Shown here: positions 5,424 to 49,979 of the stretch, in pieces
Layout of the letters: each line of letters begins with the position of its first letter
How positions within the stretch are numbered: position 1 is the first letter of the stretch
IMG/VR virus record: IMGVR_UViG_3300030202_003189
Coordinates: 1-64,000 of that record
Length of the DNA: 64,000 nucleotides
Strand: one strand, 5' to 3'
Made by a program: the position numbers and the translations under genes
The notes under the pieces: generated by a model
The model's input: the letters and a program-made list of their open reading frames with translations, nothing else
What the model was told of the DNA's origin: nothing
Database searches by the model: none

Positions 5424-6086
5424 ATGAACAACGAATTTAACAAATATGCAATAGGACACGCGGGGATATCCTCATCAGTTCTAAATGATTACCAAAATAG
5501 TGCAACCCCTTACATACTAGAAGAGAGACAATTAAGAGTCACACAGATGGACATATTCTCAAGACTAATGATGGATAGGATTATCTGGATACCTGGACCA
5601 ATTACTGAAGTAACAGGGGTAATCGTACAGGCTCAACTAATGTTTCTAGACACCGCAGATAAGAAAGACATTACTTTACATATAGATTCACCAGGTGGGT
5701 CAGTAAAGGCAGGTTTAGGTATTGTGGATGTTATGGAGTATATTAAATGTGATGTAGCAACTGTAAATACAGGAATGGCTGCCTCGATGGGGTCAGTTTT
5801 ATTGGCTGCAGGTACTAAAGGTAAAAGATCCTCTTTAAGATTCAGTAGAACAATGTTACACCAATCCAGTGGAGGGGCAGTTGGTAATATACAAGACGCA
5901 AGGATTACAATGGACGAATGGGAAAAGACAAATAAGTTATTGTTTGAACTCCTTGGTAGGTATTGTAAGAAAACAGCGAAAAGAGTAGAGAAAGATGCGG
6001 CAAGAGACTTATGGTTAAGTGCTGAAGAATCTTTAGACTACGGAATAATAGATGAAGTAATAAAAAGTAAAAAAACAAAAAAATGA
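5424..6086 (+). CDS. clpP: ATP-dependent Clp protease proteolytic subunit
   Basis: DIFSRLMMDRII, IDSPGGSV, AASMGS (Ser), MLHQ (His), RDLWLS (Asp). Confidence 0.97.
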   Translation: MNNEFNKYAIGHAGISSSVLNDYQNSATPYILEERQLRVTQMDIFSRLMMDRIIWIPGPITEVTGVIVQAQLMFLDTADKKDITLHIDSPGGSVKAGLGIVDVMEYIKCDVATVNTGMAASMGSVLLAAGTKGKRSSLRFSRTMLHQSSGGAVGNIQDARITMDEWEKTNKLLFELLGRYCKKTAKRVEKDAARDLWLSAEESLDYGIIDEVIKSKKTKK

Positions 6087-6568
6087 AAGGAAAAATCGTA
6101 ACCGAACAAGGAACTATGGTGGTAGAGTTCTATGAAAAAGACGCACCGAATACAGTAAATAACTTTGTTAAATTAGCAAAGATGGGATTCTATGAAGGAC
6201 TTAAATTTCATAGAGTTATACCAGGATTCGTGGCACAAGGAGGTTGTCCACAGGGAACTGGAGTGGGTGGACCAGGATATAGTATTCTTTGTGAGATTAG
6301 TGGCGAGAACCAACATCACGACAAAGGAGTACTATCAATGGCACATGCAGGTAGAAATACAGGAGGGTCACAATTCTTTTTAGTGCATAGTAGACACACT
6401 ACTAAACATTTAGACGGTAATCATACATGTTTTGGTAAGGTCGTAGAAGGATTAGATATTATAGATAAGGTTAGACAAGATGACACGTTTAGTATAGTTA
6501 TCGAAGGAGGAGAACAAGACCCAGAAAACATCATTGTAGAGACTCAATTGAAAACAGGGACATTTTAA
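6083..6568 (+). CDS. Cyclophilin-type peptidyl-prolyl cis-trans isomerase
   Basis: APNTVNNF, FHRVIPGFVAQGG, LSMAHAGRNTGGSQFF, HLDGNHTCFGKV. Confidence 0.96.
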   Translation: MKGKIVTEQGTMVVEFYEKDAPNTVNNFVKLAKMGFYEGLKFHRVIPGFVAQGGCPQGTGVGGPGYSILCEISGENQHHDKGVLSMAHAGRNTGGSQFFLVHSRHTTKHLDGNHTCFGKVVEGLDIIDKVRQDDTFSIVIEGGEQDPENIIVETQLKTGTF

Positions 6569-6600
6569 TTTGGTAGTTAAACAATAAAGTATTATATTTG
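6569..6600 (+). promoter_or_regulatory. Bacteroidota sigma-70 promoter TTTG-N20-TATATTTG
   Basis: TTTG 6569-6572, 20-nt spacer, TATATTTG 6593-6600, then TAGT and ATG 6605. Confidence 0.8.
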
Positions 6601-6604
6601 TAGT

Positions 6605-6805
6605 ATGAAAGATTATACATGTGATAAATGTAAAGTGGAGATGTCTATATTTGAAGTAGGATATCTTGGTTCTCCACTCGGTAAGAAAGATAGAAAGGAA
6701 TGTAATCCTTTAATGAGTCTAGATTGTTTATGTCATGAATGTTATACGAAAAGGTTAGACAAACTTGGGAAAAACCCCAACAATATGAATTATGAAAAAA
6801 ACTAA
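6605..6805 (+). CDS. Small zinc-finger protein
   Basis: CDKC...CHEC pairs in 66 aa. Confidence 0.7.
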   Translation: MKDYTCDKCKVEMSIFEVGYLGSPLGKKDRKECNPLMSLDCLCHECYTKRLDKLGKNPNNMNYEKN

Positions 6806-7490
6806 AATTATTAATTTTTTCGGAGGACCTGGAATAGGAAAATCAACCCAAGCCGCAGGACTTTATTCATTAATGAAAAAGAATAGTATGAGCGTGGAAC
6901 TAACCTATGAGTTTCCAAAGATATTGGCTTGGGACGAGAATCATTCTGCAATTAAAGACCAACTTTATATAACCGCTAATCAACATCGTAATATCTCTCG
7001 ACTATATGGGAAAGTAGAATACATTATAGTAGATAGTCCCATTTTGTTTGGGATGGTTTATAAAGACAAATACGGAGCTGAGTACCCACAAGGTTTATAC
7101 GGAGATACCTTTGATACCTTTTTATTAGATTTGTTTCAACAATACGAAAACATCAACATACTATTAAGAAGACGAGAAGAAGATTATGATGAGATTGGAA
7201 GATTCCAAGATCTAAAAGAGTCTAGAGAGATTGATGGTATGTTAAGATCATTATTAGAAGATAATGAACTATCCTATCATGAGTTTGAAGTTAATAAGAA
7301 CAGTGCAACAACAATATATAAAACACTATTTGAGGATATGGAAGAAACAAAATGGGATGGCGGAACAATTGTAAGAATAAACCAATGTAAAGAATGTGGA
7401 AACCACGAAGGAATACAAATACCAAGTCATCCTGGTCTTGCGGAGTGTAGAGTGTGTCAACATCTGTGTGATGTAAAAGAAGAAAAGTAA
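6792..7490 (+). CDS. P-loop NTPase/kinase (AAA_28/NadR-like) with C-terminal Zn ribbon
   Basis: INFFGGPGIGKST Walker A, IIVDSP Walker B, terminal CKEC...CRVC. Confidence 0.8.
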   Translation: MKKTKIINFFGGPGIGKSTQAAGLYSLMKKNSMSVELTYEFPKILAWDENHSAIKDQLYITANQHRNISRLYGKVEYIIVDSPILFGMVYKDKYGAEYPQGLYGDTFDTFLLDLFQQYENINILLRRREEDYDEIGRFQDLKESREIDGMLRSLLEDNELSYHEFEVNKNSATTIYKTLFEDMEETKWDGGTIVRINQCKECGNHEGIQIPSHPGLAECRVCQHLCDVKEEK

Positions 7491-7514
7491 TTAATTAAAT
7501 AAATAATAAATAAA

Positions 7515-7694
7515 ATGGGAGTAAAAAAGAGAAAATTAGGGTCAAAGAATCCAAAGTACTTTGTTCCAACAAAGGACGATTCACCAGTAGTTAAAGAAAA
7601 AAAGTTAATGTGTAATGTTCCTGTTAGAGACACCAACGGTAATATAATTGAAGGTACTACTATACCGGTATATGGAGTTTGGTATGAGGACTAA
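7515..7694 (+). CDS. Hypothetical protein (59 aa, not in ORF track)
   Basis: MGVKKRKLGSKNPKYF...VYGVWYED fills the gap in the operon. Confidence 0.6.
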   Translation: MGVKKRKLGSKNPKYFVPTKDDSPVVKEKKLMCNVPVRDTNGNIIEGTTIPVYGVWYED

Positions 7695-7884
7695 AGAGTT
7701 ATTAAATAATAAGTGGATTAAATTATTATTCAGCGTTTCAATCATGTTGTCAGCGGTTCCATCTATCTATCAGGATTTTACATATGGACATAGTGGTGAA
7801 TGGACCCATTACGGTATGATGTTAGTCGGTGTTTTATATTTTATAGAGTCACTCTTGTGGACATTAGACATATGGAAGAAATAA
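7684..7884 (+). CDS. Small two-TM membrane protein
   Basis: ATG at 7684 preferred over the track start; two hydrophobic helices. Confidence 0.7.
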   Translation: MRTKELLNNKWIKLLFSVSIMLSAVPSIYQDFTYGHSGEWTHYGMMLVGVLYFIESLLWTLDIWKK

Positions 7885-8351
7885 TAAAAAAAGAACTATG
7901 GGATCATTACTCAGAACTCCCAAACCCATCATGGTATGAATATAAAGAAAATATGAAAAGCTTAGAACAACAATTAAAACAATTTGAGGAGGATATCTTT
8001 GCGGGTAAGGATATAGACATAACAGAATTTTATGTATTAAAAAAAGCATTACTAGATATTACACTGAGTGGTCATGTTGTGGAGGATTATAGTGACCTCT
8101 TAGAACTTCATGGGATATTAGAGAATATGTTAGATAGACGTCATAACGAACTTATGAATAAGAGATTAAATCTCTTAACCATTTGGTCTACGATATTTCT
8201 ACCTCTTTCATTCTATACTGGATTATGGGGAATGAATTTTGATGATGTTCCTTTAATCACAGATGATAATGGATTTTGGGTGTTCATGGGATTGACGATA
8301 ATAACTATTGGAGGTATGTGGATGTACTTCAAAAATAATAAATGGATATAA
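7872..8351 (+). CDS. corA: Truncated CorA-family Mg2+ transporter (stalk plus two TM helices)
   Basis: NKRLNLLTIWSTIFLPLSFYTGLWGMNFDDVP is the CorA TM1/GMN signature; only about 160 aa. Confidence 0.85.
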   Translation: MEEIIKKELWDHYSELPNPSWYEYKENMKSLEQQLKQFEEDIFAGKDIDITEFYVLKKALLDITLSGHVVEDYSDLLELHGILENMLDRRHNELMNKRLNLLTIWSTIFLPLSFYTGLWGMNFDDVPLITDDNGFWVFMGLTIITIGGMWMYFKNNKWI

Positions 8352-8352
8352 A

Positions 8353-8469
8353 ATGAAAGAAATAATAATAATGGTCCCACTACTTATAGTGGTAGGTGGT
8401 TTAGGTGTGGCAATAGGTATGTATATCTCTAGTCAAATAGAAAACCACATAGATAGGAACAGTAAATAA
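8353..8469 (+). CDS. Small single-pass membrane peptide (38 aa)
   Basis: MKEIIIMVPLLIVVGGLGVAIGMY...; translated by hand. Confidence 0.55.
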   Translation: MKEIIIMVPLLIVVGGLGVAIGMYISSQIENHIDRNSK

Positions 8470-8573
8470 TGAAGAACAAAAGACAATACAAAGATAGTGC
8501 AACATTTGTCTTTATAGGATATGTGGGTATAATCCTCGTAGTCTTAACAATGATTTTAGGTGTATGGGAATAA
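8469..8573 (+). CDS. Small single-pass membrane peptide (34 aa)
   Basis: MKNKRQYKDSATFVFIGYVGIILVVLTMILGVWE; coupled to the previous stop. Confidence 0.55.
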   Translation: MKNKRQYKDSATFVFIGYVGIILVVLTMILGVWE

Positions 8574-8680
8574 CTCACGTAATAGAAATAATAATGGGAA
8601 TAGGTTGGGCTGTTGGATGTTTAGTCGTCGCAACATACTCAATTACTCAGTATATAATAGAAAAAAATAAAAAATTATAA
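8564..8680 (+). CDS. Small single-pass membrane peptide (38 aa)
   Basis: MGITHVIEIIMGIGWAVGCLVVATYSI...; overlaps the previous gene. Confidence 0.5.
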   Translation: MGITHVIEIIMGIGWAVGCLVVATYSITQYIIEKNKKL

Positions 8681-8684
8681 AAAA

Positions 8685-8966
8685 ATGGAATTAATAGTAG
8701 GAATAGTAATAGGAATAATCATCGGAATAGGGCTCACTTCAGCACCACCATGGAAGTGGCAGAAAAGAAAGTGTAACACAGATTTGAAACCTGTAGATGA
8801 AAGAATGGAGAAGGTTTCTTCTAAGAAGACTCGAGCTACTCACAATAAAATAGCTGATGAGGTAACACACACAGACAAACCAAAGAAGAAAAGAAAACCA
8901 AGAAAGAATACCGGTAAAAGAAAGTATTATAGAAACAAAAAGAAAAAAGTTACCAAGACGGATTAA
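8685..8966 (+). CDS. Membrane-anchored protein with very basic C-terminus
   Basis: N-terminal TM helix, K/R-rich tail. Confidence 0.75.
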   Translation: MELIVGIVIGIIIGIGLTSAPPWKWQKRKCNTDLKPVDERMEKVSSKKTRATHNKIADEVTHTDKPKKKRKPRKNTGKRKYYRNKKKKVTKTD

Positions 8967-8992
8967 AGAAGAATCCAAAATAATTATAGTAT

Positions 8993-9193
8993 ATGGAACA
9001 TACACTTCAGGAAAGAATGAGTATCATGTTAGAAAGAATGGATAGGCACTATGGTCCCCATAGGATAAGAAGAATGTCCAAGGAAGAGATTAATAAGATG
9101 TCTCTTCTTTTTGGTGTTACCAGAGAAGAAAGAGAAGAATCTTATCAGATCCTAGAAACCATTGTGCCGACTATACCAAATAAACAACAATAA
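8993..9193 (+). CDS. Hypothetical protein
   Basis: 66-aa ORF in operon. Confidence 0.7.
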   Translation: MEHTLQERMSIMLERMDRHYGPHRIRRMSKEEINKMSLLFGVTREEREESYQILETIVPTIPNKQQ

Positions 9194-9199
9194 AAGATA

Positions 9200-9292
9200 A
9201 TGTCAGGGGCTAAAAAGAAAAAGAAAATAAAAATCGCTACTCATAAACGTAAAAAACGTTCAAGAAAAGATAGACATAAAACTAAACGATGA
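9200..9292 (+). CDS. Ribosomal protein bS22-like peptide (30 aa, not in ORF track)
   Basis: MSGAKKKKKIKIATHKRKKRSRKDRHKTKR; ungapped match to the Bacteroidota bS22 (AURKAIP1/COX24 family) pattern as recalled, including ATHKRKKR and RHK. Confidence 0.75.
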   Translation: MSGAKKKKKIKIATHKRKKRSRKDRHKTKR

Positions 9293-9465
9293 GACAAAGA
9301 AACTTAACTAAAGAGGAGAGAATCAAGAAATTAAAAGATAGAAGAGAATTTTTAATCACTGAATTATATGCCGCCCATAGACTGGATGGTTGGCACTTAA
9401 AAGGACTTAGCCAAGAATTAAAGAAAATACGAGAGAAGTTAGTTGATCTGGATATTACATCATAG
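9289..9465 (+). CDS. Hypothetical helical protein (58 aa, not in ORF track)
   Basis: MRQRNLTKEERIKKL...VDLDITS; ATGA overlap with the bS22-like ORF. Confidence 0.65.
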   Translation: MRQRNLTKEERIKKLKDRREFLITELYAAHRLDGWHLKGLSQELKKIREKLVDLDITS

Positions 9466-9468
9466 ATA

Positions 9469-11475
9469 CTATTGGAAGTTACAACAGAAACCACTCCAAC
9501 TAGATGAACAACAAGCTTTCCACTTAATTACCCAATTATCTTCACTGTGTGATGCTTTCCAACTACAACAACCCCCATTACCTCCTTTACAACACCAACT
9601 TTGTTTTCCTGATGGTATTAATGGTCTAGATGGAACTGGTTTACTCGACTTAGCTATACCATATATTTCGTCAAATTCTTTATGAGTTTCATCTACAGTG
9701 TACTCTCTCCCATCTCCTTTTGTTACCATAAACACAGGTGAACCTTCGTCTTCTCCTACTAATTCTTCCATGTCCATATCGTAATCCTCTTCTTCCTCTT
9801 TAAGGAAAGATTGATAACTTTCAGCCACTGAATTATTAGGCATTGGTTGATCTGGCGAAGCAGGACAAGGTTTTACTTGCATATCTGGTCCAACACAAAC
9901 TGTTTGTTCATACACCTGTCCATTAAGACATTCAAGTACGGCGTTAAAGTAATAGGTAGTCTTATAATAAGGTGAAGCTGGATTAGACTCAATATATAAT
10001 CCTAATAAACCTACCGATCTAGTGTAATTTGGACAGGTTCCTATACTTGTCATCTTGTGTACCCCATCCTTATAGAACTTTATGGTACCTTGTCCACATA
10101 ATTGAGCCTCCATACTAACTGAGTTTGCATCAAATTGTGTTATACTTAAAGTGAATGAACAAGATTCCTCACCACACATTAGAGAGCTATCACCACCACC
10201 ACACTCTTCATACTTTTCCAGTTTCTCACTAGATTCTGCAGATGGGTCGATATCATTAACTTCTCCATCACTCATTTCTATATCTACTTGATCTGACTTA
10301 ATATCAATTCTTCCTCCAGACTTTAATTGAGATTCCATACTACTACCTTTGTCTAATTCTCGTTCTTTTATTAACTTTCGTACGAGATTGGTAATATCCG
10401 ATTCTTTTATTCTTATTTTCTCTACTTCTTCTTCCCTATCTCTTACATCTGTAAACGGTTCTTTTTCTTTACTTAAAGAAGAGTTATTTGACATACTCAT
10501 ATCCCTATCTTTCATCATTTCTTTATCCAGTGGTAATTTACCAGGACAATCACTGTCTAGACACATCTGCTTTGTAGGATAACAAGTGGTACCATCCCAT
10601 AGTTGATATTCTCTACATCTAACACATCTTGGATTTCCAAACTTATCTGGCATCCCACATGTCCATTTATTTGATTCTGCACATTGGTCCTGACAATCTT
10701 GTGTTGTAGTATAAGGACAATGACCAGCATCTACTACAGTCTGAGAACATGGAGTAGTACAGTCATGACATCTATAAAACTCTTGTGGGTTTCCAACACC
10801 ACAGGTATTATTACAATCAGTATAAGCGTTTGCTCCTGAAAACTGTCCACTACCATCACCAGGATCTATACAACTACCATTAACACAATCATAAGTTGGT
10901 GCCATAACTCCCAGTTGACACATTTGACAATCTCCGTATGGTCCCTGTATGTTTGTTATTGAGTCTGTACCCATCATCATCATGTGCTGTCCTGTCGAAG
11001 GAACACTTACGGGACCAACATACTCTAAACAGTAATCCTGTGGATTTGGTCCTTGAGAACCACTAGTGTATTTTAATGTAGTGCCCGGTGATGGAGAACC
11101 CATCCCTAGCCAAAAGGCCTCACTATTTTGATGAGTTGCATAATTTTGTAGACTTCCATTATTAGGATTTTGTGATGCGCTATTATATGGAGATGGTGCT
11201 CCCATATACCATCCATAACTACTAACTGGACTTGAACCATTCGCCCCTGCGACGCCCTGACCGTATTGAGCAATTGCAGCATCTATACTAAAACGGTCCC
11301 AGTATCTAATACCACTTCCTAAAAATACAGCATTAGAACAATCGAACCATTCATGATACGTGTTATTATTACTTCCTATTTGTTCTGATAATGTATTCTT
11401 GGAGTTTAATGGTTTAAGACCCATTAATGTTCTACCTCTATTTAGTTCTTCTGTGAGTTTTTTCGGTGTTTTCAT
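9469..11475 (-). CDS. Cys-rich modular protein with LxE leader motifs (putative virion cargo polyprotein)
   Basis: N-terminal LTEELNRGRTLMGL and LSEQ, internal KIRIKESDITNLVRKLIKE, several Cys-rich modules, TATTTATA upstream. Confidence 0.85.
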   Translation of the reverse strand: MKTPKKLTEELNRGRTLMGLKPLNSKNTLSEQIGSNNNTYHEWFDCSNAVFLGSGIRYWDRFSIDAAIAQYGQGVAGANGSSPVSSYGWYMGAPSPYNSASQNPNNGSLQNYATHQNSEAFWLGMGSPSPGTTLKYTSGSQGPNPQDYCLEYVGPVSVPSTGQHMMMMGTDSITNIQGPYGDCQMCQLGVMAPTYDCVNGSCIDPGDGSGQFSGANAYTDCNNTCGVGNPQEFYRCHDCTTPCSQTVVDAGHCPYTTTQDCQDQCAESNKWTCGMPDKFGNPRCVRCREYQLWDGTTCYPTKQMCLDSDCPGKLPLDKEMMKDRDMSMSNNSSLSKEKEPFTDVRDREEEVEKIRIKESDITNLVRKLIKERELDKGSSMESQLKSGGRIDIKSDQVDIEMSDGEVNDIDPSAESSEKLEKYEECGGGDSSLMCGEESCSFTLSITQFDANSVSMEAQLCGQGTIKFYKDGVHKMTSIGTCPNYTRSVGLLGLYIESNPASPYYKTTYYFNAVLECLNGQVYEQTVCVGPDMQVKPCPASPDQPMPNNSVAESYQSFLKEEEEDYDMDMEELVGEDEGSPVFMVTKGDGREYTVDETHKEFDEIYGIAKSSKPVPSRPLIPSGKQSWCCKGGNGGCCSWKASHSEDNWVIKWKACCSSSWSGFCCNFQ

Positions 11476-11552: not shown

Positions 11553-12575
11553 TTAAAATAATTCTTTAATTCTACTTATTTCATCATCTTCTGGATTTAT
11601 TTTTTTGGCACCAATGTTAGGGTTAGTTGGTTCTGATGGTCCACGATATTCCTTATCAATTTCTAGGGTTCCAGTATTTGAACAAGAGATTTCACTAAAA
11701 CCAGAAGAGTGGTCACCACCTATACATACAGTATGTGAATCTATTCCTTGGGTATACTCACATTCAATTTTAGCAGTATAGTTTCCAGATATTGTGGGAG
11801 GTACGACATATTCAGTCCCATAATTATTAAAATTTGATGCATTAAAACCTCCAGGTCCGCTAATAGTTAAATCCATACTTCCTGAGAAACCTGAATTACA
11901 ACCTTTTAATTTTAATGTTTGAGTTGATGAATCAAAAACAAAGTATTCCATAACACACTCCGCATCTGTTGGAGGAGGATTAAGATTTTGTATACCAGGT
12001 TGACTAAGACCTGATTGATTTAATGGTTTTATAATATTAAGTCCTGGGATGTTTGTAGTACATGTTGTATTAGGAGGTGGCGGAGGTGGATTAATTTGAG
12101 AACAATTATCTTGACAATATTCCATAGAACCAAATTCGTTCCCAGTTGCAAAAAACGAAGTTCCCTCATGTGAAAGTCCTACTTGTGTACAATTAGGATT
12201 TCCTTGTAAGTCGTGTCCACATACAAATTTAGAACTACATAAATTACCTCCAGGATGTGGATTCAATGAAATACCACCACTACCACTAATAGGAGTAACA
12301 TTTTTAACATACCAAGCAAGGTTACGATATTTGATATACATACCCACTTGAGGTGTTTGTCCACCGATATCACTAACAGCAGACCATGTAAGTGTTTTAT
12401 TCTGATAATCAGGCCAAGGGTCTCCATTTGGATCACAAGCCCCATATGTTCCACCAATTGGCCAGGTATTACTACAACTCCAGTCACCATAACCATTACA
12501 CCAGTCAGCACTTATTTTATAAGAAGTGGTCTGTTCATTTAATAGTTTATTGTATTTGTCTAATGATTCCCTCAT
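11553..12575 (-). CDS. Cys-rich modular protein with LLNEQ leader and EISRIKELF tail
   Basis: True start likely MRESLDKYNKLLNEQ at 12575, just downstream of TATTTATA; shares two modules with 9469-11475. Confidence 0.85.
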   Translation of the reverse strand: MRESLDKYNKLLNEQTTSYKISADWCNGYGDWSCSNTWPIGGTYGACDPNGDPWPDYQNKTLTWSAVSDIGGQTPQVGMYIKYRNLAWYVKNVTPISGSGGISLNPHPGGNLCSSKFVCGHDLQGNPNCTQVGLSHEGTSFFATGNEFGSMEYCQDNCSQINPPPPPPNTTCTTNIPGLNIIKPLNQSGLSQPGIQNLNPPPTDAECVMEYFVFDSSTQTLKLKGCNSGFSGSMDLTISGPGGFNASNFNNYGTEYVVPPTISGNYTAKIECEYTQGIDSHTVCIGGDHSSGFSEISCSNTGTLEIDKEYRGPSEPTNPNIGAKKINPEDDEISRIKELF

Positions 12576-12580
12576 ATTAA

Positions 12581-12588
12581 TATAAATA
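12581..12588 (-). promoter_or_regulatory. Putative phage late promoter TATTTATA
   Basis: Sense-strand motif 5 nt upstream of the 12575 start. Confidence 0.6.
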
Positions 12589-12635
12589 CTCACTACAGAG
12601 ATTAAAGTGTAGGGGGCTGGGGGAAAGATACCGAA

Positions 12636-12715
12636 GGTTCGAGGTACACAAGAGATAAGTAAAAAACAAGAAAGGAGGGATGGGAGGATAGTACCTTCTG
12701 GTTCGAGGTGCACAA
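12636..12715 (+). repeat. Two 16-bp direct repeats GGTTCGAGGTRCACAA
   Basis: Copies at 12636-12651 and 12700-12715, one mismatch, in a divergent intergenic region. Confidence 0.6.
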
Positions 12716-15994: not shown

Positions 15995-15995
15995 G

Positions 15996-16070
15996 TCGGG
16001 GTGGCAGGATTCGAACCTGCGGCCTCCACGTCCCAAACGTGGCGCGATAACCGGGCTACGCTACACCCCG
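15996..16070 (-). tRNA. trnP: tRNA-Pro (UGG), CCA not encoded
   Basis: Minus strand CGGGGTG acceptor stem, CCACG-TTTGGGA-CGTGG anticodon arm, GCAGGTTCGAATCCTGC T-arm. Confidence 0.97.
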
Positions 16071-27224: not shown

Positions 27225-27965
27225 ATGGATGATTTAATTAACAAAATAGTGGAGGAAACGATAGATAGTATGGTTTATAGGGAAAAACCTAAAAAGAAAC
27301 ATATTAAACGAATGGATAAGGATTTAGGTCCTCTAAAAGGTTTCCCAATAGAAAAATTTAAGAATGTATTCCCACCAAGTAACGAATCTAATGAGACTGA
27401 GGAAGAACTTAAAAAATTAGATGGTATTTTAATCGATGATAAATTTGTCGATAGTGCTGATGACATAGACAATCACTTCAAAAATTATTTGGAGTCAAAA
27501 GACTTAGAATTTCCTTTGGAAAAAATTAAGAAGTATATGCCAGGGGTTAGGTCAATAATTTTACAATTAAAATATCACTATAACCGTCCACGTCCAGGAC
27601 AAATTGCACAAGCAAAAGGAATGGATAAGTTTGACCCTGAATCATTAAAATCTGCGTCAACACCATCATACCCATCAGGACATGCAACGCAAGGTAGATT
27701 TATTGGTAAACTTTTAGGTGATATATATCCAGAACATAAAGAACAATTAATAAAAATAGGTGATGATATAGCCTATAGTAGAAATATGGCAAAGGTACAT
27801 TATCCAAGCGATACTAAATTTGGTAAAAAATTAGGTGATGAATTGTATGATTATATTTCTCCAGATAAAGGTAGGGTTAAAGAGGTTAAAAATAGATACG
27901 GTGTTGAATTAGACGAAATGTTTAATACAATATGTAAAATAATAGATGAAAGACAAAAAATATAA
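27225..27965 (+). CDS. PAP2/haloperoxidase-superfamily acid phosphatase with LxE leader
   Basis: KYHYNRPRP, SYPSGHA and SR..AKVHYPSD are the three PAP2 motifs. Confidence 0.9.
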   Translation: MDDLINKIVEETIDSMVYREKPKKKHIKRMDKDLGPLKGFPIEKFKNVFPPSNESNETEEELKKLDGILIDDKFVDSADDIDNHFKNYLESKDLEFPLEKIKKYMPGVRSIILQLKYHYNRPRPGQIAQAKGMDKFDPESLKSASTPSYPSGHATQGRFIGKLLGDIYPEHKEQLIKIGDDIAYSRNMAKVHYPSDTKFGKKLGDELYDYISPDKGRVKEVKNRYGVELDEMFNTICKIIDERQKI

Positions 27966-33020: not shown

Positions 33021-36000
33021 ATGAAAAAATTATTTACATCACTTTTAATATTTTTAACCCTATCCACCAGCGCTCAAAACAGCTGGATTAACATCCAATT
33101 ATTAACAGATAATTACCCAACAGAAACGTCTTGGAACATCACCCCTCCAGGAGGTTATCCTATTATTATTCAAAATGATTCAGCAATGTTACCTAATACC
33201 TTGTATGATACTACTATTGCCATTCAAGGTACAATTGTCGCATCTATTTTTGACCAATATGGTGATGGGTTAAGTGCTTCACAGTGGGGAGGTACTGATG
33301 GTTGGTTTCTTATACAAAATGATTGTCAAGATACAATTATGTATGTAGCGGGTAATTTTGGTGATACTTTAGTTAATACACTACAAATTGCTCCATGCGC
33401 ACCTCCTTCTGGTGGTTGTTTAGATTCATTAGCGACCAATTATGATCCAACAGCTGCTTTTGATGATGGTTCATGTATCTACCCTCCCTGTGCTGGTTTA
33501 GATACATTTTATGTTATAAATTATTGTCAAGGGGCACAAAATAAAGTTCATTATAAATGGTCAAATATGGCTAACCCTAATTGTAGGATGGCCGCGTATA
33601 CGAGGTCCACAGACCCTTATTCTTTAGGGTCACAATGGTACCCTTACCCAGGAAATTTTTCAAATACAGGAATATTATTTAGTAATAGTCAAAACAACAC
33701 AACATATTATTTCTTAGGTATGTTAGCAGATTCTTCTTATACCGATACATTAGTAGTTACAACACAAGAATGTATTCCAGGTTGTACCGACCCAACGGCA
33801 CTAAATTACAATCCTTGGGCAAATTCAGATGATGGTACATGTCAAGCACCACCTGCAAATTGTATAACTGGAGAATCTAATATAGTAGTAACAGTAATGC
33901 CAGACACATACCCAGGGGAGACATCTTGGGAAATAGCAGATACAACCGGAACTGTATTAGCCACATCACCAGCTTACTCTACACCAGGTGTTCCTGTAAT
34001 TACAGAAGTATGTATACCAAACGGTACGGTTATTGAATTTACCTTGTTTGACTCATTCGGTGATGGTTTATGTGGTTCATGTTATGGAGGAGCTGATGGA
34101 GGAGCAGTAGTACAGACCCTTTGTGGTGATACTATATTAGCTATATTACCTGGGAATGCTAATTTTGGAAATGATACTTCTGTAGTATACACAGTGGCTC
34201 CTTGTACACCAAATGCTATATTAGGATGTACAACACCAGGATTTACAGAATATAATCCACAAGCAACAGTAGATGACTCATCTTGTGTAACACCAGTCAT
34301 ATTAGGATGTACTGATATAACTTCACCAGATTACGATTCATTAGCTAACACAATGTCAGTAATACCACAATGTCAATATACATTAGTAATTACGGATGAA
34401 GCCGAAGATGGATGGTTTGGGGCGTGGGTAGGTATATTACAAGACACAACAATATTAGGTCCATTTATGATGGGTCCTCAAGATGGTTATTCAGAAACAT
34501 TTACAATTAGTTTAAGTGCTTTAAGTCCAGTAGAGTTAATGTTCTTTGCACCAGGTAATTCAGCTACCACAGCAAATCAATGTGGTTTCTTTTTAATAGG
34601 TCCTGAAGGGGACACTACCCTATCAGGAGGGACTAATCCTTGGACTGACCCAATGTTACAATTTCCTTATAGATATAATGGGGTACCTTACTGTGGTGAC
34701 TTTTGTACAGATGGTGTTCTTGGTTGTATGGACCCAACAGCCTTAAATTATAATCCATTGGCAAATATGCCTGACAATTGTACACCAGTTGTATTAGGTT
34801 GTACAAATAATTTAGCTTTTAATTATAACCCTTTAGCAAATACAGATGATAGTTCCTGTGTATCAATTATAATTGGATGTATGGACACCACAGCATTCAA
34901 CTTTAACCCAACAGCTAATACAAACGACCCATCTTCATGTATATCAGTAATATTAGGTTGTATGGATGATACAATGTTTAACTACAACGCTGCGGCTAAC
35001 ACCGACGATGGTAGTTGTATACCAGTAGTGTTTGGTTGTACAGATCCATTAGCATTTAACTATGATAGTTTATCTAACACAAATAATGGTACATGTACAC
35101 CAGTCATATTAGGGTGTACGGATGCAACTGCTTTTAATTACAACCCTAACGCAAATACTAATGATTTATCTTGTGTGGCTGTTGTTATTGGTTGTACCGA
35201 TGCGTCGGCTCTTAATTATGATTCATTGGCGAACACAAATAACGGATGTATATACCCAATTTTAGGTTGTACCGACCCTACCGCATTTAATTATAACCCC
35301 AACGCAAATACTAGTGATAGTACGTGTATACCAGTTATTATCGGTTGTACTGACGCAACCGCGTTAAATTATGACTCAACAGCAAATACAAACAACGGTT
35401 GTGTTTATCCTATCTTAGGATGTACCGATGCCACTGCGTTTAATTATAATCCTAACGCAAATGTTAATGATTCTACCTGTGTCCCATTTATATATGGGTG
35501 TACAGATAACACGATGTTTAACTATGACCCAACCGCGAACACAGACAATGGTTCTTGTATAGCGTTTGTTTACGGATGTACGGATAGTACAATGTTTAAC
35601 TATGACCCATTAGCAAATACTAACAATAACACATGTGTACCATTCATCTATGGTTGTACCGACTCCATAGCTTTTAACTATAACCCAGCGGCTAATACGG
35701 ATAATAATACGTGTATTCCAGTATTATCAGGTTGTACCGACTCAATAGCGTTAAATTACAATCCATTGGCTAATACAGACAATGGTAGTTGTATTATACC
35801 ATTATACGGGTGTACAGACTCGACAGCCTTAAATTATAATTCACTCGCAAATACTGATGATGGATCATGTATTTTACCAATTTACGGATGTACGGATAGT
35901 ACAATGTTTAACTATAATCCATTGGCAAATACAAATGATGGTAGTTGTATATCCTTTATTTACGGTTGTACCGACCCAACAATGTTTAACTACGACCCTA

Positions 36001-36809
36001 GTGCAAACTCTGACGATGGGACCTGTATCCAATTTATATATGGATGTACTGATAACACAATGTTTAACTATGACCCAACAGCAAATACCGATAATGGTTC
36101 ATGTGAGCCTTTTATTTATGGATGTACTGATAGTACAATGTTTAATTATGACCCAACAGCAAATACAGATAACGGATCTTGTATATCATTTATTTATGGA
36201 TGTACCGATAATGCGGCACTTAACTTTAATCCTTTAGCGAACACATTAGATAATACGTGTTGTTACATAGGAGGATGTACTGATTCATTGGCAGTAAACT
36301 ATAACCCTAATGCTTGTAATGATGACGGTTCATGTATAACACCAATAGTTGGTTGTACGGATGTTGCGGCTTACAATTATAATCCATTAGCAAATGTATC
36401 AGATTCTGCATCTTGTTTGTATAATGCAGGATGTTATGGAGGACCTGGAATTCCTTATTGGTTAAATGATGGGTGTTACGCTTGGGTAATAAGTGTAGAT
36501 GACTATTGTTGTACTACCGATTGGGATGCGTCATGTATATCAATGTATGATTATTGTCAACAAGGGTGGCCTACTTCAATTGAGGACATATCGGCTCTAG
36601 GGATTGTAGTATACCCTAATCCAACAACAGATATAATAACAATAGAAACAAGGTTAGATATAGAAGTTGAGGTTTACGACATTATGGGTAAACTACTAGT
36701 AAATAAAGATTCTAAACGAGTTGATTTATCAGATTATCCAAATGGGGTCTATAATCTAATAATTAAACATAACGATAAACGATATACAACAAGAGTGATT
36801 AAACAATGA
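33021..36809 (+). CDS. T9SS (type A CTD) substrate with about 26 GCTD repeats
   Basis: Signal peptide ending TSA-Q; three D.YP.ETSW-type domains; C-terminal VYPNP..YDIMGKLL..DLSDYPNGVY..RVIKQ sorting domain. Confidence 0.92.
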   Translation: MKKLFTSLLIFLTLSTSAQNSWINIQLLTDNYPTETSWNITPPGGYPIIIQNDSAMLPNTLYDTTIAIQGTIVASIFDQYGDGLSASQWGGTDGWFLIQNDCQDTIMYVAGNFGDTLVNTLQIAPCAPPSGGCLDSLATNYDPTAAFDDGSCIYPPCAGLDTFYVINYCQGAQNKVHYKWSNMANPNCRMAAYTRSTDPYSLGSQWYPYPGNFSNTGILFSNSQNNTTYYFLGMLADSSYTDTLVVTTQECIPGCTDPTALNYNPWANSDDGTCQAPPANCITGESNIVVTVMPDTYPGETSWEIADTTGTVLATSPAYSTPGVPVITEVCIPNGTVIEFTLFDSFGDGLCGSCYGGADGGAVVQTLCGDTILAILPGNANFGNDTSVVYTVAPCTPNAILGCTTPGFTEYNPQATVDDSSCVTPVILGCTDITSPDYDSLANTMSVIPQCQYTLVITDEAEDGWFGAWVGILQDTTILGPFMMGPQDGYSETFTISLSALSPVELMFFAPGNSATTANQCGFFLIGPEGDTTLSGGTNPWTDPMLQFPYRYNGVPYCGDFCTDGVLGCMDPTALNYNPLANMPDNCTPVVLGCTNNLAFNYNPLANTDDSSCVSIIIGCMDTTAFNFNPTANTNDPSSCISVILGCMDDTMFNYNAAANTDDGSCIPVVFGCTDPLAFNYDSLSNTNNGTCTPVILGCTDATAFNYNPNANTNDLSCVAVVIGCTDASALNYDSLANTNNGCIYPILGCTDPTAFNYNPNANTSDSTCIPVIIGCTDATALNYDSTANTNNGCVYPILGCTDATAFNYNPNANVNDSTCVPFIYGCTDNTMFNYDPTANTDNGSCIAFVYGCTDSTMFNYDPLANTNNNTCVPFIYGCTDSIAFNYNPAANTDNNTCIPVLSGCTDSIALNYNPLANTDNGSCIIPLYGCTDSTALNYNSLANTDDGSCILPIYGCTDSTMFNYNPLANTNDGSCISFIYGCTDPTMFNYDPSANSDDGTCIQFIYGCTDNTMFNYDPTANTDNGSCEPFIYGCTDSTMFNYDPTANTDNGSCISFIYGCTDNAALNFNPLANTLDNTCCYIGGCTDSLAVNYNPNACNDDGSCITPIVGCTDVAAYNYNPLANVSDSASCLYNAGCYGGPGIPYWLNDGCYAWVISVDDYCCTTDWDASCISMYDYCQQGWPTSIEDISALGIVVYPNPTTDIITIETRLDIEVEVYDIMGKLLVNKDSKRVDLSDYPNGVYNLIIKHNDKRYTTRVIKQ
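33415..36416 (+). repeat. GCTD coding repeat array
   Basis: About 26 units counted; dense tandem array from about 34720 to 36416. Confidence 0.9.
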
Positions 36810-47473: not shown

Positions 47474-48547
47474 ATGAGTAAAATTAAACTAGAGTATATT
47501 TGGTTGGATGGTTATAACCCAGAACAAAACATAAGAAGTAAGACTAAAATACTTGACGTAAAAGAATTAGATGGTGGAATTCTAGCACAAAATCTACCGG
47601 TGTGGTCTTTTGATGGTAGTTCTACAAAACAAGCGGCAGGAGATAATTCAGATTGTCTACTCCAACCGGTACACCTTATTAAAGACCCAACCAGAAACGA
47701 AGGTTATATCGTTTTATGTGAGGTATTAAATGCCGATTGGACTCCACATAAGAGTAATACACGACATAAATTAAGAGAATTAGAGAGGGTGGCTAAAAAA
47801 CACAAGTTTTGGTTTGCTTTTGAACAGGAGTATGTATTAACTAATATACAGGGGAGGCCGTTAGGGTTTCCAACTATAGGATACCCAAAACCACAGGGAG
47901 AATTTTATTGTGGTCTTGGTTCAGAAAATGTAGAAGGAAGAGATGTGGTAGAAGAACACTTAGACTTATGTTTAGAGGCTGGTCTAGATATTACCGGAAT
48001 AAACGCAGAAGTAATGATTGGACAATGGGAATACCAACTCATGGGCAAAGATTCTCCTCTTAAGTCAGCTGACGACCTAATACTATCAAGATATCTTCTA
48101 ATAAAATGTATGGAAAGATTCCAAGTAACGGTAGATTGGAAACCTAAACCAATTGAGGGCGATTGGAATGGTTCCGGGATGCATGTTAATTTTTCAACCA
48201 AGGAAACTAGAGAAAAGGGTGGAAAAGAGATGTTTGATGATATTTGTGAGAGTCTAGGTTTATACCATAAAGAACACATAGAGGTTTATGGAAACGATAA
48301 TGATAAGAGATTAACTGGACTACATGAGACTCAATCCATAGAAAAGTTTAGTCACGGAGTAAGTGATAGAGGTGCAAGTATTAGAATACCAATATCGACA
48401 GTTAAAAATAACTGGAAGGGTTATCTAGAAGATAGAAGACCAGCAAGTAATGGAGACCCGTACCTAATCATTGAAAAGTTAGTTTCGACTGTTTCAACAT
48501 CCTTAACTAGTAAAGAAAAACAGAAATCTTTAGTCTTGAAAAAATAA
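47474..48547 (+). CDS. glnA: Glutamine synthetase type II
   Basis: LEYIWLDG, WSFDGSST, INAEVMIGQWEYQ, DWNGSGMHVNFS, RLTGLHET, DRGASIRIP, YLEDRRPASNGDPY. Confidence 0.97.
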   Translation: MSKIKLEYIWLDGYNPEQNIRSKTKILDVKELDGGILAQNLPVWSFDGSSTKQAAGDNSDCLLQPVHLIKDPTRNEGYIVLCEVLNADWTPHKSNTRHKLRELERVAKKHKFWFAFEQEYVLTNIQGRPLGFPTIGYPKPQGEFYCGLGSENVEGRDVVEEHLDLCLEAGLDITGINAEVMIGQWEYQLMGKDSPLKSADDLILSRYLLIKCMERFQVTVDWKPKPIEGDWNGSGMHVNFSTKETREKGGKEMFDDICESLGLYHKEHIEVYGNDNDKRLTGLHETQSIEKFSHGVSDRGASIRIPISTVKNNWKGYLEDRRPASNGDPYLIIEKLVSTVSTSLTSKEKQKSLVLKK

Positions 48548-48575: not shown

Positions 48576-49979
48576 ATGAAACGAGTAAAACTAACCGAGT
48601 TTGAGATACATAGTTTAATAGATAGAGTTCTATTAAAAGAAACTGGTATTCGAGATATTAAGAAATTGGCTCAAAGATATCCTAAAGCTGAAATATATTT
48701 TCACCAAGATACTGATGGGGTTGCGACCGCAATCGCAATGAGAGAATACTTAAAAAATAACGGTATAGAAACCGTGGATTCTCATGTTATACAATATGGG
48801 GAAAAGGAATTTCAAGTAAAGAAACCAGACGCAACGGGTGATGTTATGCCAGTTCTTGTAGATTTTGCACACGGTAAGCCACAATTCACAATCCATACTG
48901 ATCACCATGACTCTCAGTCTGGGGTAGAAAAAGATACCTCAACGCAGTTTCGAGGTGCGAGATCAAATGTAGAGACTATTTCTCAAGTGGTTAGTCCTAG
49001 TGATATTTTTTCTAATGAGGATATCGCAATGATATCAGCGGTTGATTCTGCGGATTTTGTTAAACACGGTATAAAACCTGAAGACGTTATGAACTTTATG
49101 TTAAATATAGATAAACAGAAACCATCTTCAGAAAATAAAAAAATGATAGGACTTCTAACCAATAAGTTGTTATTGGCTTATAAAAATAAACCTGACTTTT
49201 TAGAAAGTTTAGTGATGAATTCCTCACCTTCACTCCTAAACATATTAATTAATATTAAAAAAATAGCGGCAGAAAAAGGATACGCAACACCAGAAGAGAT
49301 GTTACAAAATCAAACAGATTACATTGAGCGACAAAAAAGTAGTGACAAGGTTAAGTATGAAGACGGTATTATTTCACAATACGGAGGTGGGTATTTAATG
49401 AAACCAGGATCGTACGATCGTTACGTACCATTTAAGAATCATCCAGACGCTAATTTCTTTGTAATTGCGTGGCCAATGGGGTTAGTTCAAGCCTCATGTA
49501 ATCCGTTTAAGGAAGAGAGAAGTCTAAAAGGTATTAATTTAGGTGATATCGCTCAAGAAGTGTTAAATGAATATAGAACCGTTTTAGAAAATGAAAAGAT
49601 AACAATAGATAGAATAAAATGGACTAGTGAACGTAAAACAGAAGAATTTAGTTCTGGGTTTGGTTTAGCTGACCTTAAGGCTTTTTATGGGGACAATATA
49701 AAAGGAATAGACTTAAATAAAGATTCTAGTTATGTTAATCTTTTTAAGAATATTATGGATAAACCACAAAATAAACTTTCTAATAAACAACAAAAAATCT
49801 TAAAAACTGGTTGGGTTTCTGCTTGGGACATTATCCAAGCAAATTCTGGAGGACATAAATGTATAACTAATATCAGCGGAATAATGTATTTACCTAAAGA
49901 AATGAAGAAAGACATGTTGGTAGGGTTTCAACAAGGTATAATCTCAGTCCTCAAGGAAAGAATCAAAAACCAAAAATAA
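48576..49979 (+). CDS. DHH-family phosphoesterase with LxE leader
   Basis: FHQDTDG, VLVDFAHG, HTDHH and GGH motifs; MKRVKLTEFEIHSLIDRVLLKE leader. Confidence 0.85.
   Translation: MKRVKLTEFEIHSLIDRVLLKETGIRDIKKLAQRYPKAEIYFHQDTDGVATAIAMREYLKNNGIETVDSHVIQYGEKEFQVKKPDATGDVMPVLVDFAHGKPQFTIHTDHHDSQSGVEKDTSTQFRGARSNVETISQVVSPSDIFSNEDIAMISAVDSADFVKHGIKPEDVMNFMLNIDKQKPSSENKKMIGLLTNKLLLAYKNKPDFLESLVMNSSPSLLNILINIKKIAAEKGYATPEEMLQNQTDYIERQKSSDKVKYEDGIISQYGGGYLMKPGSYDRYVPFKNHPDANFFVIAWPMGLVQASCNPFKEERSLKGINLGDIAQEVLNEYRTVLENEKITIDRIKWTSERKTEEFSSGFGLADLKAFYGDNIKGIDLNKDSSYVNLFKNIMDKPQNKLSNKQQKILKTGWVSAWDIIQANSGGHKCITNISGIMYLPKEMKKDMLVGFQQGIISVLKERIKNQK

What the first reader, a model, noticed from the sequence alone, without database searches (positions are those of the whole stretch)
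9200..9292. Phage-encoded ribosomal protein bS22-like peptide missed by ORF calling
The 30-codon ORF MSGAKKKKKIKIATHKRKKRSRKDRHKTKR aligns without gaps to the Bacteroidota small-subunit protein bS22. That sequence is recalled from memory as about MPSGKKRKRHKVATHKRKKRARANRHKKKK, giving 18/30 identical positions including ATHKRKKR and RHK, and the same length. The ORF sits in the early operon with an ATGA-coupled downstream gene. Phage-encoded ribosomal proteins are known mainly for bS21, bL12 and a few others; I do not recall bS22 being reported. It could replace the host copy and retune ribosomes during infection.
Basis: partly seen in the sequence, partly recalled or inferred. Interest (0 to 1): 0.85.

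Follow-up and report, generated by a model that had tools for sequence, protein, structure and literature searches.

The report
Phage copy of tiny ribosomal protein bS22
A 231-kb marine phage that probably infects Flavobacteriales carries a conserved 30-codon gene copied from its hosts' smallest ribosomal protein, bS22, which adds a ribosomal protein not previously reported in viruses but belongs to a known class of phage genes.

Summary
Window 9200-9292(+) is a 30-codon ORF, 18/30 identical and ungapped to Flavobacterium johnsoniae bS22 (PDB 7jil_5). None of 200,000 composition-preserving shuffles reached that identity.

- **Specificity.** A bacteria-only bS22 profile hits this ORF alone among 1,630 six-frame segments of the window (51.7 bits; next best 8.5). 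A phage-only profile hits only three PDB sequences, all bS22.
- **Source.** The window is part of IMG/VR contig 3300030202_003189 (231 kb), a distant T4-like jumbo phage.
- **Conservation.** The ORF is intact in 41 phage-type loci, in at least 10 different gene neighbourhoods. pN/pS is 0.09-0.14 with near-saturated synonymous change.
- **Origin.** It is 26/29 identical to the native bS22 of uncultured marine Flavobacteriales. That native gene always lies between HU and RNase G. Phage variants occur in none of 39 bacterial genomes hit.
- **Gene calling.** The exact peptide is absent from a 15-billion-protein collection, which fits a missed gene call.
- **Literature.** I found no report of a viral bS22.

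Most likely it is a host-derived ribosomal protein that occupies the exchangeable bS22 slot (h44/h45-H70) of host ribosomes during infection. Ribosome binding, any retuning and "early" expression are untested. It is a new member of a known kind. Interest is moderate to high.

The parts
9200..9292 (+). Phage-encoded bS22 homologue: 30 codons plus TGA; 12 K, 5 R, 2 H; calculated pI about 12.
   Evidence: ORF read. It gives 18/30 identity to 7jil_5. A bacterial-only bS22 HMM scores 51.7 bits, E 7e-15, as the only hit in the window. A phage-only profile hits only bS22 chains in the PDB. pN/pS is 0.09-0.14. AlphaFold2 predicts a single helix over residues 3-28, pLDDT 87.5.
9170..9199 (+). A-rich leader with no Shine-Dalgarno sequence (...aaataaacaacaataaaagata ATG, A at -3). 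It overlaps the end of the upstream ORF.
   Evidence: Read directly. A-rich leaders precede most phage copies. Bacteroidia rely on upstream adenines rather than SD for start selection, and A/G at -3 stacks on G693 (PMC13000457). That this is the initiation signal is inference.
8993..9193 (+). Upstream 66-aa ORF of unknown function. It is on the same strand and in the same frame, and its TAA stop lies 6 nt before the bS22 ATG.
   Evidence: No Pfam family. Homologues lie upstream of bS22 in the closest relatives, L085 and L053.
9289..9465 (+). Downstream 58-aa ORF whose ATG overlaps the bS22 TGA (ATGA), suggesting translational coupling.
   Evidence: The same -4 overlap and a homologous ORF occur in L053, L085 and L093. 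No Pfam family.

Best explanation
Window 9200-9292(+) is a real, expressed-type gene of a marine jumbo phage. It encodes a homologue of bS22, the about 30-residue ribosomal protein of the small subunit.

**Origin (shown).** The gene came from marine Flavobacteriales, the probable hosts. It has since been maintained under purifying selection while the phage lineage diversified and reshuffled the surrounding genes.

**Mechanism (inferred).** The peptide is made during infection from an A-rich, SD-less leader inside a tightly packed same-strand gene array. It then binds host ribosomes in the bS22 slot. In Bacteroidia that slot lies between 16S helices h44 and h45, and the basic C-terminus reaches 23S helix H70. 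Host bS22 is weakly held, because it is lost from isolated 30S subunits. A phage copy could therefore supplement or displace it by mass action. That would keep the intersubunit contact filled when host supply stops.

**Possible tuning (inferred).** The phage-specific changes are at positions 9-10, R20Q in most copies, and an extra C-terminal K/R. They may alter subunit joining or initiation near the IF3 C-terminal domain.

**Shown:** homology, phage origin, conservation, selection, host-lineage affinity. **Inferred:** expression, ribosome binding, functional effect.
For: **Homology**
- phmmer against the PDB gives only bS22 chains: 7jil_5 (E 2.3e-4), 9i5v_10 and 8fmw_V.
- A phage-only profile improves these to 4e-7 and 7e-7, still with no other PDB protein at E<=10.
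- Shuffle control: 0 of 200,000.
- Bacterial-only HMM: one hit in the window, 51.7 bits.
- Invariant in 17 distinct phage peptides: T14 H15 K16 R17 K18 K19, R22, R25 H26 K27. The same core is seen in the three solved bS22 chains.

**Phage origin**
- The window equals IMG/VR contig 3300030202_003189, 231,285 bp.
- It carries a T4-type TerL and PHROG families for prohead protease, endolysin and tape measure.
- 32 bS22-bearing loci share other genes with the window. These include contigs of 298 kb (L013) and 40 kb (L044, 17 shared ORFs).

**Selection**
- pN/pS is 0.14 overall. It is 0.094 on codons 15-27, which lay outside the search pattern, with pS 0.78.
- Ser codons switch between AGY and TCN, and Arg codons between AGR and CGN.
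- The ORF persists across at least 10 upstream and at least 8 downstream neighbour families. Gaps to neighbouring genes are mostly -4 to +8 nt.

**Host link**
- 26/29 identical to the commonest bS22 of marine Flavobacteriales/Cryomorphaceae MAGs.
- In hosts the gene sits in HU-bS22-RNase G synteny in 119 of 120 loci. In phage loci this is 0 of 41.
- No phage variant appears in any of the 39 species genomes hit.
- A T9SS sorting domain on a phage protein also points to Bacteroidota.

**Exchangeability and site**
- bS22 lies between h44 and h45 and touches H70 (PMC7797042; PMC12123416).
- It is absent from purified 30S but present in 70S initiation complexes, and is predicted to lie near the IF3 C-terminal domain (PMC13000457).
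- Viruses preferentially carry easily exchanged ribosomal proteins (PMC6375957).
Against: - There is no expression, proteomic or structural evidence, so ribosome binding is inferred from homology alone.
- The cellular role of bS22 in Bacteroidia is itself unresolved, so no phenotype can be predicted with confidence.
- The relatives were collected with a DNA pattern that fixes codons 1-8, 11-12 and 14. This inflates apparent N-terminal conservation, hides variants with other N-termini, and makes the locus count cap-limited.
- Thirty codons give little phylogenetic signal. A single acquisition is not rejected, but it is not shown either.
- The helix prediction would be expected of almost any K/R-rich peptide.
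- Pfam and NCBIfam give no hit, although the positive controls fail as well.
- Timing of expression ('early') is unknown. The sigma-70 promoter scan is uninformative.
Confidence: 0.7

Rival explanations
1. Co-opted basic peptide. The gene descends from bS22 but no longer acts on ribosomes. It would serve as a generic nucleic-acid binder, for example in DNA condensation or packaging, as an RNA chaperone, or as an internal virion peptide.
For: The peptide is extremely basic (17 K/R in 30 residues). Phage copies carry changes never seen in host copies: R20Q in 31 of 41 loci, variable positions 9-10, and a longer tail. Their neighbours are unrelated to translation. No other ribosomal-protein family appeared among the families shown for the window.
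Against: The positions kept invariant in phages are the bS22-specific non-compositional core, THKRKK...RHK, shared with Flavobacterium, Porphyromonas and Borrelia bS22. A generic polycation would not need H15, T14 or H26 in register. Length is held at 29-31 residues. pN/pS of 0.09 is as expected for a specific binding site.
Confidence: 0.1
2. Antagonist mimic. The phage peptide occupies the bS22 site so as to impair host ribosome function. It might block IF3 or 50S contacts for host mRNAs or promote hibernation. It would not be supplying a working subunit.
For: When built into E. coli ribosomes, viral bS21 cut in vitro translation to about 5% (PMC6375957). The divergent positions include the C-terminal tail, which in bS22 faces H70 and IF3.
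Against: The phage needs the same ribosomes for its own 231-kb genome. The changes are conservative and add basic charge rather than removing contacts. The window copy differs from the host consensus at only 3 positions plus one added Arg.
Confidence: 0.12
3. Host DNA rather than a phage gene: a chimeric assembly, a mis-binned contig, or the host flank of a prophage.
For: IMG/VR does contain host-flank copies. L003 and L019-L023 carry host-type bS22 in MutY-HU-bS22-RNase G synteny next to an integrase or HicB.
Against: The window copy is embedded in phage genes on both sides. Its flanks lack HU and RNase G. The same arrangement recurs in independent assemblies from many samples. Phage variants are absent from all 39 bacterial genomes hit. 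Synonymous divergence from host copies is high, pS 0.73.
Confidence: 0.02
4. Chance open frame in A-rich DNA with no coding function.
For: The region is A-rich and the ORF is only 93 nt long. Gene callers did not report it.
Against: argue against it: the shuffle control, pN/pS of 0.09 with AGY/TCN serine switches, profile specificity, and 41 intact copies with no frameshift or stop.
Confidence: 0.01

Closest known systems
Bacteroidota ribosomal protein bS22 (Fjoh_1533 of Flavobacterium johnsoniae, PDB 7JIL chain 5; the Porphyromonas gingivalis homologue; 9i5v chain 10)
   Same: Both are 30 residues long and align without gaps, with 18/30 identity and the core [AS]THKRKK...[ND]RHK. Both have extreme basicity and a predicted single helix followed by a basic tail. 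Against the native bS22 of marine Flavobacteriales MAGs the identity is 26/29.
   Different: The gene is encoded by a phage, outside the conserved bacterial HU-bS22-RNase G neighbourhood. It carries phage-lineage substitutions: K9/I10 and D24 here, and R20Q in most relatives. It usually has one more C-terminal K/R than the 29-residue host form. Presence in a ribosome has not been shown.
Virus-encoded ribosomal proteins, above all phage bS21 (Pelagibacter phage HTVC008M; Bacteroidota-associated huge phages), bL12 and bL9 (Mizuno et al. 2019, PMC6375957; Chen et al. 2022, PMC9723584)
   Same: Each is a small, peripheral, easily exchanged ribosomal protein acquired from the host lineage. They occur mainly in large aquatic phages and are kept under purifying selection.
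   Different: This is a different ribosomal protein. 'S22' does not occur in the text of the 14-protein survey, and no paper in the library pairs bS22 with phages. bS22 is restricted to certain lineages (Bacteroidia, Mycobacteria, Borrelia and others). It sits at the subunit interface rather than on the platform. At 30 codons it falls at or below gene-caller thresholds.
Mycobacterial bS22, mitochondrial mS38 (AURKAIP1/COX24) and eukaryotic eL41
   Same: These occupy the same structural slot at h44/h45 with a helical, highly basic peptide, according to PMC7797042, PMC12123416 and PMC10081302.
   Different: Their sequences were not detected by either the single-sequence or the profile search of the PDB at E<=10. 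The relationship to the phage peptide runs only through Bacteroidota bS22.

Membership tests
bS22 (bacterial small-subunit ribosomal protein, Bacteroidota type) | Significant sequence similarity to structurally verified bS22 chains, beyond what composition gives | tested here: met
   The PDB searches return only bS22. None of 200,000 shuffles reached the observed identity. A bacterial-only HMM scores 51.7 bits, with the next segment at 8.5 bits.
bS22 (bacterial small-subunit ribosomal protein, Bacteroidota type) | About 30 residues, very basic (pI about 12 or more) | tested here: met
   The peptide has 30 residues, with 12 K, 5 R, 2 H and 1 D, and a calculated pI of about 12.0. F. johnsoniae bS22 has 30 aa and pI 12.7 (PMC7797042).
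bS22 (bacterial small-subunit ribosomal protein, Bacteroidota type) | Single alpha-helix followed by a short basic C-terminal tail | tested here: inconclusive
   AlphaFold2 predicts a helix over residues 3-28, pLDDT 87.5. This agrees with the feature, but such a prediction is expected for most K/R-rich peptides.
bS22 (bacterial small-subunit ribosomal protein, Bacteroidota type) | Physically bound in the ribosome between 16S h44 and h45, contacting 23S H70 | not testable with these tools
   This needs MS or cryo-EM of ribosomes from expressing or infected cells.
bS22 (bacterial small-subunit ribosomal protein, Bacteroidota type) | Bacterial genomic context mutY-HU-bS22-RNase G (a regularity found here, not a formal criterion) | tested here: not met
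   119 of 120 host loci lie next to HU and 112 next to RNase G. None of the 41 phage loci does. This is expected for a gene moved into a phage genome.
Pfam AURKAIP1/COX24 domain and NCBIfam ribosomal-protein models | Score above the curated cut-off of a family model | tested here: inconclusive
   The phage peptide matches 0 families. So do F. johnsoniae bS22 and two native Bacteroidota bS22 sequences. The libraries therefore cannot decide.
Virus-encoded ribosomal proteins (host-derived translation genes of phages) | Encoded inside a bona fide viral genome rather than host flank or contamination | tested here: met
   The source is a 231-kb IMG/VR contig with TerL and other phage families. 32 loci share further phage genes with the window. 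No phage variant occurs in the bacterial genomes hit.
Virus-encoded ribosomal proteins (host-derived translation genes of phages) | Purifying selection on the viral copies | tested here: met
   pN/pS is 0.14 over the whole ORF. It is 0.094 on codons outside the search pattern, from 24 distinct sequences of 32 context-confirmed loci.
Virus-encoded ribosomal proteins (host-derived translation genes of phages) | Incorporation of the viral protein into host ribosomes | not testable with these tools
   This has been shown for viral bS21 in E. coli (PMC6375957). It is untested for this peptide.

The most novel reading that the evidence does not exclude
The phage bS22 variant is a specialised ribosome-tuning factor rather than a spare part. 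It would displace the loosely bound host bS22 at the h44/h45-H70 bridge next to the IF3 C-terminal domain. Its lineage-specific changes (positions 9-10, R20Q, extended basic C-terminus) would then alter subunit joining or start-site selection. The outcome would be that SD-less, A-rich or leaderless phage mRNAs out-compete host mRNAs. That would make it the first viral factor acting on an intersubunit bridge, and a natural probe of the unknown function of bS22.
Probability: 0.25. Interest if true: 0.8.

Novelty: new member of a known kind. Interest (0 to 1): 0.62.

Why it matters
Phage-encoded ribosomal proteins are an established class, dominated by bS21. bS22 was recognised only through cryo-EM, is restricted to a few bacterial lineages, and still has no assigned role in Bacteroidia.

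Several consequences follow:
1. The finding adds a ribosomal protein to the viral repertoire.
2. It shows that surveys relying on gene calls and Pfam or NCBIfam models systematically miss 30-codon genes. The native host gene is itself labelled 'hypothetical'.
3. It gives a sequence-based host assignment to uncultured marine Flavobacteriales for a cosmopolitan group of 230-300-kb phages.
4. It provides natural variants, with the R20Q change and the extended tail, for testing what bS22 does at the h44/h45-H70 interface.

Tried and rejected
- The search for homologous proteins and the search for related loci refuse a 30-aa query. The look-up of encoding contigs refuses 29 aa. I replaced them with degenerate DNA patterns.
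- **Family libraries.** Pfam and NCBIfam gave no hit. They are equally blind to proven bS22, so I dropped them as evidence.
- **INPHARED phages.** Megablast of 8 kb around the ORF found nothing. tblastn of the peptide found nothing, but the low-complexity filter probably masks it, so this is not a meaningful negative.
- **First pattern (ATHKRKKR).** It mostly returned chance frames and host-type copies. The host-type IMG/VR copies turned out to be host flanks, so I do not count them as phage genes.
- **First shuffle script.** It timed out and was rewritten.
- **Promoter/terminator scan and Rfam.** Neither found anything bearing on the ORF.
- **Chimera or host contamination, and a chance ORF.** Both were considered and rejected (see the rival explanations).
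- **Foldseek.** I did not run it on the 30-residue helix because it would be meaningless.
- **Other ribosomal proteins in the phage.** I could not look for bS21 or others in the remaining 167 kb of the contig, because only the window is held.

Full report
**1. The observation**

Window 9200-9292(+) reads ATG, 29 further codons, then TGA. Identity is 18/30.

Five of the identities are not K or R: M1, A13, T14, H15 and H26. None of 200,000 shuffles that keep the peptide's composition reached 18 identities (maximum 16). The BLOSUM62 score has z = 7.3 in fixed register and z = 10 when the best of 21 offsets is allowed.

phmmer against 177,635 distinct PDB sequences returns three hits at E<=10, all of them bS22:
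- F. johnsoniae, 2.3e-4.
- 9i5v_10, "AURKAIP1/COX24 domain-containing protein", 1.5e-3.
- 8fmw_V, bS22, 5e-3.

A profile built from 14 bacterial bS22 sequences only was run with all filters off against every stop-to-stop segment of 20 aa or more in the six frames of the window (1,630 segments). This ORF scores 51.7 bits (E 7e-15) and nothing else exceeds 8.5 bits. The K/R-rich C-terminus of the neighbouring ORF 8685-8966 does not score.

**2. What the sequence comes from**

Window 5859-10975 is identical to a stretch of IMG/VR contig UViG_3300030202_003189, which is 231,285 bp long. The window has about 34% G+C and one tRNA-Pro.

Phage features:
- A T4-type large terminase (60430-62199). Its best relatives, at only 31-33% identity, are Microcystis phage Mel-JY01 and Flavobacterium phage vB_FspM_immuto.
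- PHROG families for prohead protease, endolysin/M23 and tape measure.
- Many ORFs with no family assignment.

No near relative exists in the GenBank phage collection. A 1,262-aa protein (33021-36809) ends in a type IX secretion sorting domain, a Bacteroidota trait.

**3. Relatives of the ORF**

HMMER against 1.84 billion cluster representatives found two close relatives at 83-86% identity. Degenerate DNA patterns then recovered the family:
- In IMG/VR, two more phage contigs carry it: L010 (18 kb) and L013 (297,623 bp). Both share other genes with the window.
- In metagenomes, the capped scan returned 120 marine loci, every one with an intact 27-36-codon ORF.
- In one genome per species (185,579 species), 39 loci were hit. 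Nearly all are marine Flavobacteriales or Cryomorphaceae MAGs.

The loci fall into two classes with no overlap.

*Host class (120 loci).*
- Peptides are ...RLKIATHKRKKRSRKNRHK[TN]K or ...AKKI[AS]THKRKKRLRKNRHKNK, mostly 29 aa.
- 119 lie next to an HU gene and 112 next to RNase G.
- In a 2.1-Mb Flavobacteriales chromosome the order is MutY-HU-bS22-RNase G.
- None shares a gene with the window.

*Phage class (41 loci, 28 distinct nucleotide sequences).*
- Positions 9-10 are variable. Position 20 is Q in 31 of 41. The peptide is usually 30 aa, ending KK or KR.
- None is next to HU or RNase G.
- 32 share further genes with the window, up to 17 ORFs in L044.
- None of these variants occurs in any bacterial genome hit.

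Host-type copies found inside IMG/VR contigs L003 and L019-L023 sit in the HU-RNase G synteny next to an integrase or HicB. They are host flanks, not phage genes.

The window peptide is 26/29 identical to the commonest host variant but only about 81% identical at the DNA level.

**4. Selection**

Among phage copies, pN/pS is 0.14 with pS 0.69. I then restricted the analysis to the 32 loci with confirmed phage context and to codons 15-27, which were not fixed by the search pattern. There pN/pS is 0.094 with pS 0.78.

Ser2 and Ser21 use both AGY and TCN codons, and Arg uses AGR and CGN. This requires selection on the amino acid.

Residues T14, H15, K16, R17, K18, K19, R22, R25, H26 and K27 are invariant in 17 distinct phage peptides. 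A profile of those phage peptides alone finds the same three bS22 chains in the PDB with better E-values (4e-7, 7e-7, 6e-5) and nothing else.

The ORF persists in at least 10 different upstream and 8 different downstream gene contexts. It is nearly always packed -4 to +8 nt from same-strand neighbours.

On an 81-nt tree the phage label needs 3 changes, against 25 for shuffled labels. A single phage clade is not rejected (p-AU 0.90). The alignment is too short to prove one acquisition.

**5. Annotation status**

The exact window peptide and two other phage variants are not in the 15-billion-protein collection. The host variant is there as "hypothetical" or "Uncharacterised protein [Cryomorphaceae bacterium]" on 501 contigs. 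One phage variant appears on 78 contigs, the longest 277 kb.

Pfam and NCBIfam report nothing for the peptide. They also report nothing for F. johnsoniae bS22 or for native Bacteroidota bS22. Their silence therefore carries no weight.

**6. How it most likely works**

From the literature:
- bS22 of F. johnsoniae and P. gingivalis is a single helix lying between 16S h44 and h45. Its basic C-terminus contacts 23S H70, forming an extra bridge next to the decoding centre (PMC7797042; PMC12123416).
- It is missing from purified 30S subunits but present in 70S initiation complexes. Its C-terminus is predicted to lie within reach of the IF3 C-terminal domain (PMC13000457).
- In M. smegmatis, loss of bS22 raises kanamycin sensitivity (PMC10081302).
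- Viruses tend to carry exchangeable ribosomal proteins, and viral bS21 enters E. coli ribosomes (PMC6375957).

I therefore propose that the phage peptide is translated from its A-rich, SD-less leader, which has A at -3 as Bacteroidia prefer. I propose that it then fills or takes over the bS22 slot in host ribosomes.

The minimal version of this idea is maintenance. A tiny, weakly bound subunit would be kept in supply during a long jumbo-phage infection. The stronger version is tuning of subunit joining or initiation by the phage-specific residues.

My estimates:
- About 0.93 that this is a genuine, selected, phage-borne bS22 homologue.
- About 0.7 that it binds the ribosome at that site.
- About 0.25 that it changes translation in favour of the phage.

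AlphaFold2 predicts a helix over residues 3-28 (pLDDT 87.5). This is compatible with the proposal but weak evidence.

**7. Comparison with what is known, and novelty**

The closest known entity is Bacteroidota bS22. The nearest functional analogy is phage bS21. Searches of the paper library for bS22 with phage, for AURKAIP1/COX24 with phage, and for phage- or virus-encoded ribosomal proteins found no report of a viral bS22. The 2019 survey of 14 viral ribosomal proteins does not contain "S22".

This is a new member of a known kind: host-derived ribosomal proteins in large aquatic phages. Its value lies in four things: the blind spot it exposes, the host link it provides, its abundance in marine metagenomes, and the natural variants it offers for studying bS22.

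**8. Limits**

- All functional statements are inferences.
Prevalence and diversity are therefore lower bounds, and N-terminal conservation is partly imposed by the search.
- "Early operon" could not be tested.
- The rest of the 231-kb genome was not available to scan for other translation genes.

Noticed in passing
window 33021-36809 (+): A 1,262-aa phage protein ends in a type IX secretion system C-terminal sorting domain (Por_Secre_tail, 45.7 bits against a cut-off of 27). This signal is specific to Bacteroidota. It supports the host assignment and suggests the phage protein is exported through the host T9SS.
   Followed up: partly
window 7800-8351 (+): A 183-aa protein matches only the C-terminal pore part of the CorA Mg2+ channel (profile positions 204-291 of 292) and contains a GMN motif. 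Homologues recur in related phage loci. This may be relevant because bS22 binding is sensitive to Mg2+ in vitro, but no link was tested.
   Followed up: no
window 6083-6568, 6792-7490, 47474-48547, 49944-50543(-), 51507-53960(-), 27225-27965: The window carries a set of auxiliary genes: a cyclophilin-type prolyl isomerase, a dNMP/thymidylate-kinase-like protein, a glutamine-synthetase-like protein, an M23 peptidase, an 817-aa ClpB/ClpC-like AAA+ ATPase and a PAP2 phosphatase. There is also a ClpP-family hit whose ORF I did not localise.
   Followed up: partly
window 9469-11475 (-) and 11553-12713 (-): Two large cysteine-rich ORFs (668 and 386 aa) lie on the opposite strand immediately downstream of the bS22 gene array. 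Neither has a Pfam or PHROG family. A distant homologue of the first occurs in L044 and L053.
   Followed up: no
window 8353-8469 (+); L029, L038, L047, L052, L074, L088 and others: In 17 other phage loci, a small single-pass membrane protein (45-61 aa with a basic tail) directly follows the phage bS22 gene. Its homologue in the window lies about 730 nt upstream (50% identity over 26 aa). This is a recurrent partner of unknown function.
   Followed up: partly
L171 5490-7541; L019 1344-4702; L003 401-2476: The native bS22 gene of Bacteroidota sits in a conserved mutY-HU-bS22-RNase G neighbourhood, both in marine Flavobacteriales and in the MPSGKKRKRHK-type lineages. In MAGs it is annotated only as 'hypothetical protein'.
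   Followed up: yes
L003, L019-L023 (IMG/VR contigs): Several IMG/VR 'viral' contigs include host chromosome carrying the native bS22 locus, next to an integrase or a HicB-like gene. These look like integrated elements with host flank. They could be mistaken for phage-encoded bS22.
   Followed up: partly
window 8993-9292 (+): The upstream 66-aa ORF is in the same reading frame as the bS22 ORF and is separated from it only by TAA plus two codons. Read-through of that stop would fuse the two. In other phage loci the upstream gene is in other frames, so this is probably incidental.
   Followed up: no
window 15995-16070 (-): A single tRNA-Pro (anticodon TGG) is the only RNA gene found in the window by ARAGORN and Rfam.
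   Followed up: no
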